Notes: a model not told the origin generated them from the sequence alone. A stretch of DNA of 64,000 nt from Macrostomum lignano (GCA_002269645.1 NIVC01000957.1:124001-188000); one strand, 5' to 3'. Shown: positions 1-9,000, counted from the first letter of the stretch. Numbers and translations: made by a program.

Positions 1-740
1 TCAGGCAAAGAGTGCACCCAGTTAAGCAGGTCAAGAGAGCCTCTCAACAAACCAATCAGAGGACCTATCTGCCGGTAGCCAAGGAATCCACAGAGACCAA
101 AGCGCTCAGATGGGATGCTGTTGCTGATCTTGACTGACGATTGCCGCCGCTGCTCTTCGCTTTTTGATGGTCGTTGCTGCTCTCAGATCACTGCCAGGAG
201 ATATTGATGATGCTTCTCAGGGGGAACTTAGCTGTTGGAGCCGAAACTGCCGGGGAAAGGGGGATCAGGTCGGCAGGACCAGAAGAGGAAGCAGCAGGGC
301 AGGGAAGGTCCCGGAGGAGGCGGGTTACTCGAGCGCGGGTCGAGTTGCCGCCTTTTATAGCTCTCACGCGGCCGATTTGTTATAACGCACGACGAATTTT
401 CCGATTGGCTGAGAGCTTTTGTTAAAATAGGCGCCGAATTTTCTGATTGGTCGAGCCGGGGGCAGTCAGGTCGACTCTGATTGGCTGAGCTCAAGACCCC
501 AAAACCCACCCCACCAGGTGGCCTTCAGACCCCAGGGAAGTTGACAGGTGCGGTCATAAATCATTAGCAAAACATAATAAAAATCACTTGTCTAGACATC
601 CTGACGCCAAAAGTGACAGCAAAACGCCCATAAATCAAAGGAGAAAGCAACAGAGCGAGTGGGGGGAAAGCTGGAAAGACCTCTTTGACCCAGACAGGCT
701 GGAGCCAAAAGTGACAGCTAGACGGCCATAAATCACTGAA
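1..740 (-). mobile_element. Diverged copy C of a promoter-bearing LTR-like dispersed repeat (runs off window start)
   Basis: Minus-strand TATAAAA at 353-359, CCAAT boxes (attgg 404, 446, 481) and TGACAG..CATAAATCA modules at 542, 614 and 712. The reverse complement of 1-130 aligns by eye with 2470-2560 (tgtggatt..ctg.ttgg.t.g.tgagaggct..ct.gac.tgctt). Confidence 0.55.
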
Positions 741-1629
741 AACAGTAAAAAAGCCACAAATCTGGGGGGTCAGAACGAGGTTGAAAACGCCCCTCCAAGA
801 CTTAGTGTCGCCTGTCTAGACTGCTAGAGGTCAATCCGTCTCAAACCCAGACAGTCTGACCTTCAAAGATGCGTAAACAATCCAAAATTAGAGTCTTAAG
901 AGAAGTACATTGAGTATCTAACAGAATCAATAGTAATGGCATAAATTAGTATAGAACTAAGCCTAGATGAGAGAATGGAAAGAAGTTCCTAAGCTAGCCT
1001 ACTGACAGTAGGGGAAAAGCGCATCGAAGCAAAATGTGCGGTTCTGAGATTGAAAACAGGTGCGTCCCCATCAGTAAAAAACTAAATTTAATAAAAACTT
1101 GAAGCTTAACAGAAAACGCATTTTAAAGTGTCTTCAGTTATAGTCCAATTTGTTTTAATGTGTAGCCCTGCGGGGCGGTGTGGTGTGTGTTTTAGGGGGA
1201 CCCTGCACTACTGAGTAATCGAGTTAAGTAGAGTAGAGTATAACGAAAATTGTTGTGAGAAATCTGCAAAATGTGATCGACCTTTGCATTGCATCCCTCT
1301 TTTCTGTCAGAGAAAAAATCTACATAATAATTTGAGCTGTTTTGCTGTCTGTTGATATTTTCGAGAATCGTCTCTAGAATCGCTCTAAAAAGTTTCAGGT
1401 GGTCATGCATAACATTTTTTTCGATGAAAAAATCGATTTAGGAAGCGGGTCAAATATTCGAAGAACGATGCTTCTTAATGCTTTTTGAATAAGCGCTGGA
1501 TGGTCATGATGAGGACGCACTTTTTTCCAAATCCCGCGCTAGCACATGGGTTCTAAACTTGACTAGCCTACAAACAGTGGGCAATGGGCATTTTTATCCT
1601 TTTTCTGCGAATTGTCATAGAATCTATAC

Positions 1630-5806: not shown

Positions 5807-6042
5807 TTAGTTCGTTAAGTCCGCGTCCGCGGCGCATTGTCGAACATCCCGGCCTTCATCGGCGGCACCAGCAACCAGGCGCCACCGCTTGGCGCCACCA
5901 GAGCTTCCGCTGTGCAACGCGGCGTCTGTCAGGCAGCCGTCGAAGCCGACTGGTTGAGCAGACGGCCAAAGAGAGCGCCTTGAGCCCAGAGCCGCCGTCA
6001 GGTGGTGCCCATGGAGCTGCCAGGTCGAGCGGTCGATACCAC
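5807..6042 (-). CDS. EGF-LamG gene exon 13 (end of LamG3, stop)
   Basis: Acceptor aatcag|GT. LLLG|[21 protein letters not shown]. Confidence 0.8.
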
Positions 6043-9000
6043 CTGATTTTAATAGAGTTGTGAGATTCGCTGACAATGACTGCAGGCTCAACAAAACTTT
6101 GAGAGTAAAAGAGTTTTGACTTTCAAATGTCGTCGGGCTCGTACGGTACAAGCAATATCCGACGTTTACCACGCCTATCAACGTCGCAGATAAATATGGG
6201 TACATCAAAGACAACTAAAGCAACGTATATACAGGACGCAACTATCGCAATCTAATGGGTACATCAAGGACAACTAAGGCAACGTATATACAGGACGCAA
6301 CACTCGCAATCTATGGAAAATGCTTTCGAGGCCACTTTTCGTCAAAAATACACTACGAAGATAGGAAGTTTTCATTTTTCAGCAGACAAATTGTTATTGC
6401 TTTTGATAGGAGGCCGCAGAACCAATTGCAATATTCATCTTTTGATATGTTGTGCCTTTCTTATAGCTCTGTTGATATTCATAAAGCTTTTCGTTCAGAA
6501 AATTAGGATTCCATGTTAATTTCTTATTCTACGTACACATGTTCTGAGTCTAAAAACCATTAAAATGGCACAGCTCGGCTCATTGGTTTTATGAATCTTT
6601 CTTATCATTCTTAGCTGTGTAACAATATGTTAAAATATGATAAAACAGGTTCATAAAAACAAAGATTCAAGATGTGTCATGCTTTTTATGATTTTTAGGT
6701 ACAGGAAATGTACGTCGGCGGACATTGCAATGTTGCATGGAAGGTCATTGCATGGATTGAATGCTGCTTGCTTACACTGAAAATTAGTGTAAACAATTAG
6801 CGCAAGTAGTGCATTGTGACCAAAGGACCGCATGTACCTGTGATGGGTTGATGGGAAGCCTTCGGGCCTCAGGTCTCAGAAATAAATCAATTAGAGTCCT
6901 GCCCCACCCACTCCTGTCAGATGGTCAGCCCCATGGTAGCTTGATCTGTGGCGAGCAGTCTAGGTCCTATAGCTAAGAGAGGGACAGCGAGAGACAAGCA
7001 GGGAGAATTTTGAAGGTAGAGATCAGCTAATCCGCAGATTAACTAACCCGCTGCCACCAGACCGTGCGTCCTGGCTCACCAAACTGGAACTTTCGAAATA
7101 GGGCTTTCGACTTGAAGGGGCTTAGCACTTACCTGCCGACTAGTGTCTTTTTGCTGTCAATCTTGAAGCCATAGCTGATGATAAGGGACACTGCTGGGAC
7201 TTGATCGCATTGGCCATGCAGGTACAGAGGGGACTTGTGCAGGGGATTCTTGCAGTGGCGAGTCTATGGGGTAGCTACATGTACAATTACATGGCTAAAT
7301 ACGAAGAATTGTACTTTTGGCCTTCAACGCGCCAACTAGCCTCATAGCGCTGATGATAGACTAACTCGAACCTCTCAGAGACCGCATGATTCATCACCCG
7401 AGCCGCTTGGCGAATCTAGAGTGCACAGAAGTACATCTCTAGCGCCGATTTTGCACCATTGGTAATTTCGCAAACTGATTTGATAGATTGATCGACTGAG
7501 AACTGCCTTGCCATTGGTCCACTGTGACCGGCGCCTACTAGCTTAGCTACTCATCTGAGCCGTCGGCGTACAAAGAAATAAAACTGTCAGATTTCACCTT
7601 CTCATCGGATCGCTTCACACTTCAGATTGAATCGGAGTATCAGACTAATAACAGTATTATTGAATGATTTCTGCCTCAATAACAGCACTACTGAACAAAA
7701 TGAGCAAAAGTGTGCGCCTAATCCAGCTACTGAAACAGGGGACAGATAAGGAATCACCCGATCAAGCAAGTCTAGGCAGCCTCTCACCCAACCAATCAGA
7801 AACTCAACAGCCGGAGACCAGGTAATCAACAGTGACCGAATCGGCTTAGTGCTTCGCAGCTGTAGGCCGGGGGATGATGATGTTGCAGTCTTCGCTGATA
7901 GCTAGCAGGTGATGCTCTTAAACTCATCGATCGATGCCGTTGACCGTTGATTTTTTCTTGATGAAGAGGGGGTTGTCGCAATCCGGGGACGACGGTCGTG
8001 ACTCCGGAGTAATAAGTCCGGGAGTCCAAAAGGGATGACGAAGTCATGACGAGGCGTCCGGAGGTTGAGTCCGAGCGGGAAAAAACATATCGGTTTATAT
8101 AGCCGCCAACTGGACCGCAATTTATTAAAATGGAACACCCTGACGCTGATTGGCTGAGCCGATTTGTTATAACTGACCTAGAAATTTCTGATTGGCTGAG
8201 CTTGTTGCCACCCAAACTCACGTGACCAAAAGATCCTATCAGTTCCCTCGGGGCCATAAAAACACGCCAGGTGCTGTCATAAATCACTCGAAATCGCTAC
8301 AGAATGATTTGTGACCCTTCGCGTAGGAATTACAAAAATTAATGAAAAAATATGGATTAGAAAGATCTTATGTAGTAAAAAGTGAAGATGGTGAAGAGAA
8401 CTCGATAATCGCTAATCCCAAAAGTACTTCTAGGGGTAAAACGCATAGTTGTCAAAGCTGTCACACGCTTGAGTGAACACGAACAATAGGCCCTGACCTC
8501 ATAAATCTGATGGCCTGTCAAAAATAATGAGAAAAAAGCTACCGCCCGCATCCTCTCAGACCATCTGGCGCCAGCCTCAACACTGAGTGAGGCGCAGGTG
8601 GCTGTCAGACCAGCTCAAAAGCAATGATTTATGACCCCAAAAGTAGCGAAAACCGCGCCTATGTTATTATAACTACAAGTATGGCAAAATGATATAGCTA
8701 CAATTGCTATCTGTGGTGATGCTTGCTACGAGCATTAGGGTATGCTTGCTATCTGCGGTTGCTTACTTTTGGAGGGGGATGCTTGCTATCTGGGGGGTGC
8801 TTGCTGTCTTGGGAATATTTTCTATTTAGGGGGAATGTCTGGTATCTTTGTGAAAGCTATATTTTGTTGTCTGGTTGTTAATTTTAGAAAAAAAGAGATT
8901 CATAGCAAATATCATTGTCCGTGACAATTTTACATTATTAAGGTGATTTTTAAAAGTGAAGGAATTGGTGCTTAAGAAAATGTGCTTGTTAAATTGTTTC

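What the first reader, a model, noticed from the sequence alone, without database searches (positions are those of the whole stretch)
340..8700. Mobile promoter cassette carrying clustered HOX-PBX + MEIS sites, 42-bp-spaced CCAAT boxes and TATA, in three copies
Seen: copies A (1630-3485 +), B (6841-8700 -) and the much more diverged C (1-740 -) keep the same architecture. Paired CCAAT boxes are exactly 42 bp apart in all three (2125/2167, 8149/8191, 404/446), and TATA lies about 50 bp further on. Upstream is a TGACAG-N7/9-CATAAATCA module (C: 542, 614, 712; A: 2034-2055, with extra CATAAATCA at 1687 and 2007 and TGACAG at 1714 and 1799). In B the distal TGACAG is lost but a new one overlaps the other site (TGATTTATGACAG, 8275-8287), which looks like site turnover. 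Known: TGATTTAT is a PBX-HOX heterodimer site, TGACAG is the MEIS/PREP (TALE) site, and CCAAT binds NF-Y. Inference: an LTR-like family may be spreading a ready-made HOX/TALE-responsive promoter, which could give body-axis or stem-cell-restricted activity.
Basis: partly seen in the sequence, partly recalled or inferred. Interest (0 to 1): 0.72.

Follow-up and report, generated by a model that had tools for sequence, protein, structure and literature searches.

The report
Solo LTRs with a conserved promoter
The three repeats are leftover long terminal repeats of a retrotransposon family in a Macrostomum-like flatworm genome; they keep a CCAAT-CCAAT-TATA promoter core and an upstream homeodomain-type motif module, which is ordinary for such elements, and the proposed HOX/PBX/MEIS control is plausible but untested.

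Summary

- **Copy extents.** They are longer than stated: A = 1507-3485 (+), B = 6841-9187 (-, with a 365-nt nested insertion at 8701-9064), C = 1-1073 (-, cut by the window start).
- **Mobility.** A and B begin TGATGAGG and end CCCATCA. Each is flanked by its own 4-bp target-site duplication (GTCA/GTCA and CCTG/CCTG). They are independent insertions with LTR-type ends and no internal coding capacity, so solo LTRs.
- **Copy C.** C is a related, much more diverged family that shares the 5' terminus.
- **Conservation between lineages.** Between A and C, every exact match of 10 nt or more upstream of the TATA box falls in either the TGATTTATG-N7-CTGTCA module or the two 42-bp CCAAT units. These modules are therefore kept between lineages.
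- **Conservation between A and B.** Motif positions are not significantly better conserved than background (P = 0.06).

The LTR-like mobile promoter reading is supported. The identity of the binding factors (NF-Y, PBX/HOX, MEIS) and any body-axis activity rest on motif matches only. A precedent exists: human MER57 LTRs are co-bound by NF-Y and TALE factors.

This is a new member of a known kind, of modest interest.

The parts
1507..3485 (+). Copy A: solo LTR, 1979 nt, 5'-TGATGAGG...ACCCATCA-3'
   Evidence: Homology with B starts and stops abruptly at these bases. No ORF of 50 aa or more is conserved inside. No internal direct repeats were found.
1503..1506 (.). Target-site duplication of A, left copy (GTCA)
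   Evidence: Read directly from the sequence. Identical to 3486-3489.
3486..3489 (.). Target-site duplication of A, right copy (GTCA)
   Evidence: Read directly from the sequence.
6841..9187 (-). Copy B: solo LTR of the same family, 2347 nt including a nested insertion
   Evidence: Aligns with A at 86% over 1878 nt, or 91.3% over aligned columns. It has the same termini as A.
6837..6840 (.). Target-site duplication of B (CCTG), inner side
   Evidence: Read directly from the sequence. Identical to 9188-9191.
9188..9191 (.). Target-site duplication of B (CCTG), outer side
   Evidence: Read directly from the sequence.
8701..9064 (.). B-specific insertion of about 365 nt, absent from A. It carries a 17/18-mer minisatellite at 8704-8847.
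   Evidence: A 1507-1645 aligns to B 9187-9065, and A from 1630 onward aligns to B from 8700 downward. The minisatellite matches the arrays at 53.0-53.3 kb and 55.6-56.0 kb.
1..1073 (-). Copy C: diverged related LTR. Its 5' end is at 1073 (TGATGGGGACGCAC) and its 3' part is cut off by the window start.
   Evidence: nhmmer with the A+B profile gives 578-14 at E = 8.9e-32 and 1073-977 at E = 0.016. The alignment is shown.
2117..2200 (+). A: two tandem 42-nt units, each with AGCCAATCAG. The CCAAT boxes are at 2125 and 2167.
   Evidence: Both 10-mers are identical in B, and the units are recognisable in C.
8146..8197 (-). B: CCAAT pair (8149 and 8191), 42 nt apart
401..486 (-). C: CCAAT pair (404 and 446), 42 nt apart, plus a third CCAAT box at 480
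2219..2226 (+). A: TATA-like box TATTTAAA, 52 nt after the second CCAAT
8094..8101 (-). B: TATA box TATATAAA
353..359 (-). C: TATA box TATAAAA
2034..2055 (+). A: TGATTTATG-GCCGCAC-CTGTCA module (PBX/HOX-like plus MEIS-like half-sites). An E-box, CACCTG, overlaps it.
   Evidence: The module is 21 of 22 identical to C 542-563.
8265..8286 (-). B: the same module. TGATTTATG is kept, CTGTCA has changed to CTGGCG, and a new TGACAG overlaps (TGATTTATGACAG, 8274-8286).
542..735 (-). C: three modules at 542-563, 614-637 and 712-735, written on the window + strand as TGACAG-N7/9-CATAAATCA. The last two are part of a sub-repeat of about 98 nt.
1687..1695 (+). A: distal extra CATAAATCA, conserved in B at 8625-8633. 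A second extra copy at 2007-2015 has become CACAAATCA in B.
2465..2553 (+). Block about 250-330 nt downstream of TATA that is conserved in all three copies (B about 7755-7843, C 15-104). It may form a hairpin.
   Evidence: blastn gives 74% identity between A and C. An RNAalifold hairpin shows a few compensatory changes, but from only 3 sequences.
2901..3457 (+). 3' part of the LTR. It is 98% identical between A and B in 2901-3206 and 3307-3457, and contains a perfect 5' splice-site consensus CAGGTAAGT at 3173-3181 (B 7127-7135).

Best explanation
A and B are two independently inserted solo LTRs of one LTR-retrotransposon family. C is a truncated LTR of a related, older or diverged family. The host is a Macrostomum-type flatworm.

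Shown:
- Each LTR was integrated by an integrase-type reaction. The evidence is TG...CA ends with a short terminal inverted repeat (TGATG/CATCA) and a 4-bp target-site duplication.
- The coding interior is absent.

Inferred:
- The interior was lost by LTR-LTR recombination.
- The 5' third of the LTR (about 720 nt, U3-like) carries the element's own RNA polymerase II promoter.
- That promoter consists of a TATA box, two NF-Y-type CCAAT boxes (AGCCAATCAG) held 42 nt apart by an old tandem duplication of a 42-nt unit, and about 60-70 nt further upstream one to three enhancer-like modules.
- Each module pairs a TGATTTATG(R)C site (PBX-HOX, posterior HOX or CDX type) with a TGACAG site (MEIS/PREP type) 7-9 nt away.
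- These islands are what selection has kept in the replicating lineages while the rest of U3 diverged beyond alignment.
- Individual inserted copies such as B then decay.
- Transcription would start about 25-35 nt past the TATA box and run towards the CATCA end.
- Which proteins bind, and where the promoter is active, is not shown.

The confidence given applies to the structural claim (solo LTRs carrying a conserved promoter core). The identity of the binding factors is much less certain.
For: Boundaries and target-site duplications.
- A-B homology begins with 26 identical bases (TGATGAGGACGCACTTTTTTCCAAAT) directly after unrelated flanks, and ends at ...ACCCATCA in both copies.
- The flanks are GTCA|A|GTCA and CCTG|B|CCTG.
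- Each 4/4 match has a chance of 1/256 at boundaries that were fixed beforehand by homology.
- C starts with TGATGGGGACGCAC at 1073.

Non-coding unit.
- No conserved ORF lies inside.
- There is no Rfam family and no tRNA.
- No direct repeats occur inside a copy.

Promoter islands.
- Every exact A-C match of 10 nt or more upstream of TATA lies in the TGATTTATGGCCG/CCGCACCTGTCA module or in the CCAAT units.
- A and C share 12 exact 12-mers against 0.05 in shuffles.
- Both CCAAT 10-mers, and a 21-mer just before TATA, are identical in A and B. The surrounding 1907-2230 is only 83.6% identical.
- Modules C2 and C3 keep both half-sites with an unrelated spacer.

Host.
- The best named relatives of two window ORFs are Macrostomum lignano proteins.
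- In that species LTR promoters with acquired factor sites have been shown to work in reporter transgenes (PMC12801592).

Precedent: human MER57 LTRs are co-bound by NF-Y and the TALE factors PKNOX1, MEIS2 and PBX2/3 (PMC12065363).
Against: - No full-length element with two such LTRs, a primer-binding site, a polypurine tract or gag-pol is in the window, and none could be fetched.
- No AATAAA, ATTAAA or common variant lies downstream of the TATA box on the element strand in A or B. The only AATAAA near an end is on the opposite strand. The R/U5 layout and even the sense strand are therefore inferred from the CCAAT-CCAAT-TATA order alone.
- R+U5 would be unusually long, at about 1230 nt.
- Between A and B the motif positions are not significantly better conserved than their surroundings (P = 0.06).
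- Only two independent lineages are available for the footprint argument.
- The TALE site is 58-70 nt from the nearest CCAAT, not the TALE-10 bp-CCAAT geometry described for cooperative binding (PMC12065363).
Confidence: 0.8

Rival explanations
1. The structure is right (solo LTRs with a promoter), but the upstream modules are not HOX/PBX/MEIS sites. They would bind other factors, for example a CDX/caudal or posterior HOX monomer on TTTATGRC, or a bHLH, Snail or ZEB factor on the overlapping CACCTG. Alternatively they serve the element in another way, such as RNA or DNA signals. The TALE reading would then be a coincidence of short motifs.
For: - The motifs are only 6 and 9 nt long. TGACAG occurs 78 times in the window.
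- In A and C1 the conserved block is a continuous 22-24 nt that includes the spacer and an E-box.
- The extra TGACAG and CATAAATCA copies in A have inconsistent order and spacing.
- B lost the CTGTCA site.
- No DECA (TGATTGACAG) site is present, and the TALE-10 bp-CCAAT geometry is absent.
Against: - The composite TGACAG-N7/9-CATAAATCA occurs 4 times against 0.02 expected.
- C2 and C3 keep both half-sites with a different spacer and no E-box. This points to the half-sites themselves.
- TGATTTATGRC is, from established knowledge, a good match to the PBX/Exd-posterior HOX consensus.
Confidence: 0.45
2. A and B are complete non-autonomous DNA transposons, or another class of element with very short terminal inverted repeats and 4-bp target-site duplications. 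They would not be LTRs.
For: - The ends form a short inverted repeat (TGATG...CATCA).
- No full-length LTR element, primer-binding site or polyadenylation signal was seen.
- Some DNA transposon superfamilies make 4-bp duplications (established knowledge).
Against: - The inverted repeat is only 5-7 nt long.
- TG...CA ends with a 4-bp duplication and a unidirectional CCAAT-CCAAT-TATA promoter about 700 nt from one end is the standard LTR layout.
- A length of 2 kb without sub-terminal repeats at both ends is atypical for non-autonomous DNA elements.
- The likely host has more than a hundred Ty3/mdg4, BEL/Pao and Copia families (PMC12801592).
Confidence: 0.07
3. The repeats are a local inverted segmental duplication of a host gene's promoter and first exon, not mobile DNA.
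For: - A and B are inverted, 3.35 kb apart, and face each other.
- Parts are 98% identical, which could reflect gene conversion between nearby inverted repeats.
- A perfect splice-donor consensus lies inside.
Against: - Each copy has its own, different 4-bp target-site duplication and identical sharp ends.
- A third, diverged copy with the same 5' terminus lies next to them in yet another context.
- There is no coding exon.
Confidence: 0.03

Closest known systems
Solo LTRs of Ty3/mdg4 (Gypsy), BEL/Pao or Copia retrotransposons. In Macrostomum lignano these are the 137 curated LTR-RT families of Ustyantsev et al. 2025 (PMC12801592). Long-LTR clades such as Gmr1/Osvaldo are a candidate from general knowledge.
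   Same: - TG...CA ends with a short terminal inverted repeat.
- A 4-bp target-site duplication.
- A non-coding unit with an internal TATA promoter preceded by clustered factor sites.
- Several copies in a repeat-rich region.
- In M. lignano, LTR promoters with acquired factor sites (heat-shock elements) drive reporters.
   Different: - The superfamily is unknown because no internal part is available.
- At 2 kb the LTR is long.
- No canonical polyadenylation signal was found downstream of TATA.
- The factor sites are CCAAT and homeodomain-type motifs, not heat-shock elements.
Human ERV LTRs bound by NF-Y: LTR12 (ERV9), which has multiple CCAAT boxes, and MER57, which is co-bound by NF-Y and the TALE factors PKNOX1, MEIS2 and PBX2/3 (PMC12065363, PMC3730095, PMC5085097)
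   Same: - Repeated high-quality CCAAT boxes (AGCCAATCAG) in the U3 part of an LTR.
- In MER57, CCAAT and a TALE site are some tens of bp apart rather than in the tight 10-bp geometry.
   Different: - A different phylum and unrelated sequence.
- Binding is demonstrated by ChIP-seq in human cells, whereas here it is only a motif match.
- In MER57 the TALE site lies 3' of CCAAT, whereas here it lies 5'.
- The site here is of the PBX-HOX type (TGATTTAT) plus a separate TGACAG, not the PBX-PREP decamer.
Tripartite PBX-HOX plus MEIS/PREP elements of Hox-regulated enhancers, and the DECA-CCAAT (TALE/NF-Y) composite elements of zebrafish and mouse developmental genes (PMC6023610; bioRxiv 10.64898/2026.02.16.706105)
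   Same: - A TGATNNAT-type site sits with a TGACAG site within about 10 nt.
- NF-Y-type CCAAT boxes lie nearby.
   Different: - There is no TGATTGACAG decamer.
- The distance to CCAAT is 58-70 nt, not about 10.
- The elements sit in a mobile LTR rather than a host enhancer.
- No functional data are available.

Membership tests
LTR retrotransposon (solo LTR) | 5'-TG...CA-3' ends with a short terminal inverted repeat | tested here: met
   A and B read TGATGAGG...ACCCATCA, and C starts TGATGGGG.
LTR retrotransposon (solo LTR) | A 4-6-bp target-site duplication directly flanking the unit, different for each insertion | tested here: met
   A has GTCA at 1503-1506 and 3486-3489. B has CCTG at 6837-6840 and 9188-9191. 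C cannot be tested because its 3' end is off the window.
LTR retrotransposon (solo LTR) | U3-R-U5 layout: a promoter with TATA, then a polyadenylation signal downstream | tested here: inconclusive
   CCAAT-CCAAT-TATA is present and conserved in all three copies. No AATAAA, ATTAAA or common variant lies downstream on the element strand.
LTR retrotransposon (solo LTR) | Full-length relatives exist: two direct LTRs around a primer-binding site, gag-pol and a polypurine tract | not testable with these tools
   None is in the window. The host genome is not in the searchable collections.
NF-Y-dependent promoter | A CCAAT pentamer with consensus flanks (RRCCAATSR), in the forward orientation 50-100 nt upstream of the start site | tested here: met
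   AGCCAATCAG occurs twice in A and twice in B. C has ACCAATCAG, AGCCAATCGG and AGCCAATCAG. Binding itself is not testable here.
PBX-HOX plus MEIS/PREP tripartite element | A TGATNNAT site and a TGACAG site within about 20 nt, kept across relatives | tested here: met
   The element occurs once in A and three times in C, and the half-sites are kept with different spacers. In B the MEIS half is lost. This is a sequence-level test only. Binding, and the presence of the factors in the host, were not tested.
DECA-CCAAT (TALE/NF-Y) composite element | A TGATTGACAG decamer about 10 bp 5' of CCAAT | tested here: not met
   There is no TGATTGACAG in any copy. The nearest TALE-like site is 58-70 nt from CCAAT. 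The geometry is as described in PMC12065363.
TIR DNA transposon (non-autonomous) | Terminal inverted repeats of tens of nt, or sub-terminal repeats at both ends | tested here: not met
   Only 5-7 nt are inverted at the ends. No other inverted similarity exists between the two ends of A.
DIRS-like or tyrosine-recombinase retroelement repeats | Inverted or split terminal repeats, no target-site duplication, and an internal complementary region | tested here: not met
   Target-site duplications are present. The A+B profile has no similarity to the DIRS-like candidate at 40.3-44.5 kb.

The most novel reading that the evidence does not exclude
This flatworm LTR family, and a related family, may have fixed a TALE/HOX (PBX-HOX plus MEIS) enhancer module next to a phased pair of NF-Y sites.

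Its transcription would then be tied to the TALE/NF-Y programme that marks early embryonic or stem and germ cells, or to posterior positional identity.

Dispersed solo LTRs would seed position- or stem-cell-specific promoters around the genome.

That would be a convergent counterpart, in a regenerating flatworm, of NF-Y/TALE-bound MER57 LTRs in humans and of TALE/NF-Y elements at zebrafish genome activation.
Probability: 0.15. Interest if true: 0.6.

Novelty: new member of a known kind. Interest (0 to 1): 0.3.

Why it matters
LTRs that carry ready-made promoters and enhancers are a well-documented source of host regulatory DNA. This case adds another example, from a flatworm that can be made transgenic.

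If the homeodomain and NF-Y reading were confirmed, the family would offer two things:
- a compact promoter that can be tested in a reporter and has positional or stem-cell logic;
- a case of convergent use of the TALE/NF-Y pair by retroelements in distant animals.

As it stands, the firm result is structural: solo LTRs with target-site duplications and a footprint-like conservation pattern. That is useful for annotation but not surprising.

Tried and rejected
1. Other copies through spurious ORFs. Translations across the promoter of A, B and C were aligned and searched against the protein collection. No hit was found.
2. Exact look-ups of window ORFs, to find the source record and more flank. 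None is on record.
3. DNA pattern scans.
   - The 5' terminus pattern gave nothing in the metagenome or viral collections.
   - A CCAAT-N-CCAAT-N-TATA pattern gave six metagenome contigs with no further similarity to the LTR. These are chance matches.
4. RNA genes and ribozymes, tried because Penelope-like elements carry hammerheads. There was no Rfam hit at gathering scores, one meaningless hit at E = 0.92, and no tRNA.
5. Coding capacity. No ORF is conserved between A and B.
6. A paralogous empty site in the window. The flanks have no second copy.
7. DIRS-type inverted repeats, considered because A and B are inverted. Rejected because each copy has its own target-site duplication.
8. A nested LINE 3' end as the explanation for B's insertion. 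Only the 17-mer minisatellite part matches the arrays beside the LINE ORF, so the nature of the insertion is left open.
9. Supplementary tables of the M. lignano LTR paper, sought for a consensus to compare. None is held.

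
Full report
**What is there**

Self-comparison of the window shows that 1630-3454 (+) matches 8700-6853 (-) at 86% over 1878 nt. A further stretch, 1507-1632, matches 9187-9065.

A local alignment of the outer ends shows that the similarity begins abruptly with 26 identical bases. 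These are TGATGAGGACGCACTTTTTTCCAAAT, at 1507 in A and 9187 in B. B carries about 365 nt (8701-9064) that A lacks.

At the other end both copies stop at ...ACCCATCA, at 3485 in A and 6841 in B (read). The units are therefore A = 1507-3485 (1979 nt) and B = 6841-9187 (2347 nt).

A profile built from A and B finds a third copy on the minus strand. Positions 578-14 match with E = 8.9e-32, and the 5' terminus matches at 1073-977, starting TGATGGGGACGCAC. C is therefore 1-1073, and its 3' part is cut off by the window start.

**Mobility**

Directly outside A the sequence reads GTCA (1503-1506) and GTCA (3486-3489). Directly outside B it reads CCTG (6837-6840) and CCTG (9188-9191).

The boundaries were fixed by the homology break before the flanks were inspected. 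Each 4/4 match therefore has a chance of about 1/256.

The following features together are the signature of solo LTRs:
- TG...CA ends with a short inverted repeat (TGATG/CATCA);
- 4-bp duplications that differ between copies;
- no ORF of 50 aa or more shared by A and B;
- no Rfam family and no tRNA;
- no direct repeat inside a copy.

A and B are inverted relative to each other only because they inserted independently in opposite orientations. This excludes a local inverted duplication. It also excludes DIRS-type repeats, which make no duplications.

**Host**

A WSC-domain ORF in the window has its only relative in Macrostomum lignano, at 62% identity.

The LINE reverse transcriptase ORF at 53444-55642 has M. 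lignano proteins as its best named relatives, at 77-96% identity over partial lengths.

Fibrinogen, C-type lectin and WSC domains confirm an animal genome. I take the source to be M. lignano or a close relative. This is an inference, not a proof.

**The promoter-like cassette**

- The two CCAAT boxes are 42 nt apart in each copy because they lie in two tandem 42-nt units. In A these are 2117-2158 and 2159-2200. Each unit reads AGCCAATCAGAA..TCGNCG...TTWTAACAAA. The same two units are recognisable in C. The spacing is therefore an old duplication that both lineages have kept without net indels.
- C has a third CCAAT box at 480.
- A TATA-like box follows 48-52 nt later.
- About 60-70 nt upstream lies TGATTTATG-N7-CTGTCA. 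A 2034-2055 is 21 of 22 identical to C 542-563.
- C has two more copies with a 9-nt spacer of unrelated sequence (614-637 and 712-735).

**Is it more than chance?**

- CATAAATCA occurs 10 times in the window against 0.55 expected from shuffles. Eight of the ten lie in the three copies.
- The composite motif occurs 4 times against 0.02 expected.
- Upstream of TATA, A and C are otherwise barely alignable. Yet every exact match of 10 nt or more between them falls in either the TGATTTATGGCCG/CCGCACCTGTCA module or the CCAAT units. They share 12 exact 12-mers against 0.05 in shuffles.

This is a footprint-like pattern between two lineages of the family.

**What the A-B comparison says**

A-B identity is very uneven (chi-square 74 on 19 df, p = 2e-8).

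| Region (A coordinates) | A-B identity |
|---|---|
| 1907-2230, the promoter-proximal region | 83.6% |
| 2901-3206 | 98% |
| 3307-3457 | 98% |

There are two possible explanations, and I cannot separate them.
- Most A-B differences arose in the replicating lineages before insertion. This would fit fast-evolving U3 and constrained R/U5.
- Gene conversion between these nearby inverted copies homogenised some parts.

That is suggestive but not significant. The CCAAT 10-mers contribute 0 of 20 mismatches.

B's module differs from the A/C form by three substitutions in 22 nt, which is what the local divergence predicts. 'Site turnover' is therefore not demonstrated.

**Mechanism**

The best-supported reading is that the 5' third of the LTR is the element's U3 and carries its RNA polymerase II promoter.
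- AGCCAATCAG is a near-ideal NF-Y site (established knowledge).
- Repeated CCAAT boxes in LTR promoters are known from human LTR12, MLT1 and MER elements (PMC12065363, PMC3730095, PMC5085097).
- TGATTTATGRC matches the PBX/Exd-posterior HOX consensus, and TGACAG matches the MEIS/PREP site (established knowledge). Posterior HOX or CDX alone would also fit.
- In two of the four modules an E-box (CACCTG) overlaps the CTGTCA site.
- Human MER57 LTRs are co-bound by NF-Y and PKNOX1, MEIS2 and PBX2/3, with the sites about 50 bp apart (PMC12065363). TALE and NF-Y also co-occupy developmental elements in zebrafish (PMC6023610). The combination is therefore plausible and has precedent.
- The tight TALE-10 bp-CCAAT geometry is not met here.
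- In flatworms, NF-YB is needed in spermatogonial stem cells (PMC4909293). This would suit an element that must be transcribed in the germ line, but that link is an inference.
- M. lignano LTR promoters with acquired factor sites have been validated by reporter transgenesis (PMC12801592), so the hypothesis can be tested in that system.

**Weak points**

- No full-length element, primer-binding site or gag-pol could be linked to these LTRs.
- No canonical polyadenylation signal follows the TATA box on the element strand. The U3-R-U5 assignment and the sense strand therefore rest on the conserved CCAAT-CCAAT-TATA order.
- Only two independent lineages support the footprint argument.
- No expression data were reachable.

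**Verdict**

'LTR-like mobile promoter' is supported. 'HOX/TALE-responsive, body-axis or stem-cell restricted' remains a motif-based hypothesis. The finding is a new member of a known kind and of modest interest.

Noticed in passing
window 40306-44499 (-): A run of retroelement ORFs. One has a reverse transcriptase domain (42328-42885, E = 6e-13). One has a weak, sub-threshold phage-integrase SAM-like match (40306-41628). Together they make a DIRS-like (tyrosine-recombinase) retroelement candidate, unrelated to the LTR family studied here.
   Followed up: partly
window 53444-55642 (-), with 53042-53343 and 55607-56047: A LINE-type ORF (RT plus RNase H) whose closest named relatives are in Macrostomum lignano. 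It is flanked on both sides by arrays of a 17-mer (AGCAAGCACCCCCAGAT). The same 17-mer array sits inside the B-specific insertion (8704-8847).
   Followed up: partly
window 8701-9064: An insertion of about 365 nt in LTR B that is absent from A. Only its minisatellite part matches anything else in the window. Its nature and its own target-site duplication were not resolved.
   Followed up: partly
window 2901-3206 and 3307-3457 (A); 7100-7400 and 6870-7020 (B): The 3' part of the LTR is 98% identical between A and B, whereas the promoter-proximal part is 84% identical. The cause is either strong constraint or subfamily recombination in the active lineage, or gene conversion between the nearby inverted copies. 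A perfect splice-donor consensus CAGGTAAGT lies inside (3173-3181; 7127-7135 on the minus strand).
   Followed up: partly
window 2465-2553 (A), about 7755-7843 (B), 15-104 (C): A block 250-330 nt downstream of TATA is conserved in all three copies. It contains an inverted CCAAT (CTGATTGG) in B and C. It can be drawn as a hairpin of about 80 nt with a few compensatory changes, but three sequences are too few to judge.
   Followed up: partly
window 46286-46756 (-) and 58444-58914 (-): Two near-identical 156-aa ORFs with a signal-peptide-like start and a WSC domain. The best relative is an M. lignano WSC protein at 62% identity. They appear to be part of a duplicated segment.
   Followed up: partly
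window 26430-26907, 29255-30165, 31390-31784, 33009-33199, 59419-61183: Very long (ACAG)n/(TGTC)n and (TAGT)n microsatellites. Some lie next to C-type-lectin-like ORF fragments (32619-33218). There is also a duplicated block, 31130-31880 and 32749-33380. More than 30 minisatellite arrays occur elsewhere in the window.
   Followed up: no
window 51555-51647 and 51908-51967: Short interstitial arrays of the telomere-type hexamer AACCCT.
   Followed up: no
window 4739-4752 and 5156-5182: Two features lie in the spacer between A and B. One is a palindromic GGTATTTAAATACC in a GC-rich context. About 400 nt further on is GTCGCCATTTTGAGTGAGCAGGTAAGG, which looks like a short non-coding first exon with a splice donor. 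This may be a host promoter onto which the two LTR promoters converge.
   Followed up: no
window 9185-9424 (-) and about 9700-9900 (-): Open, coding-looking stretches directly outside LTR B. B may lie in or next to a host gene.
   Followed up: no
window 62291-62725 (+): An ORF with a strong fibrinogen C-terminal domain match (E = 2e-30), probably an exon of a fibrinogen-related gene.
   Followed up: partly
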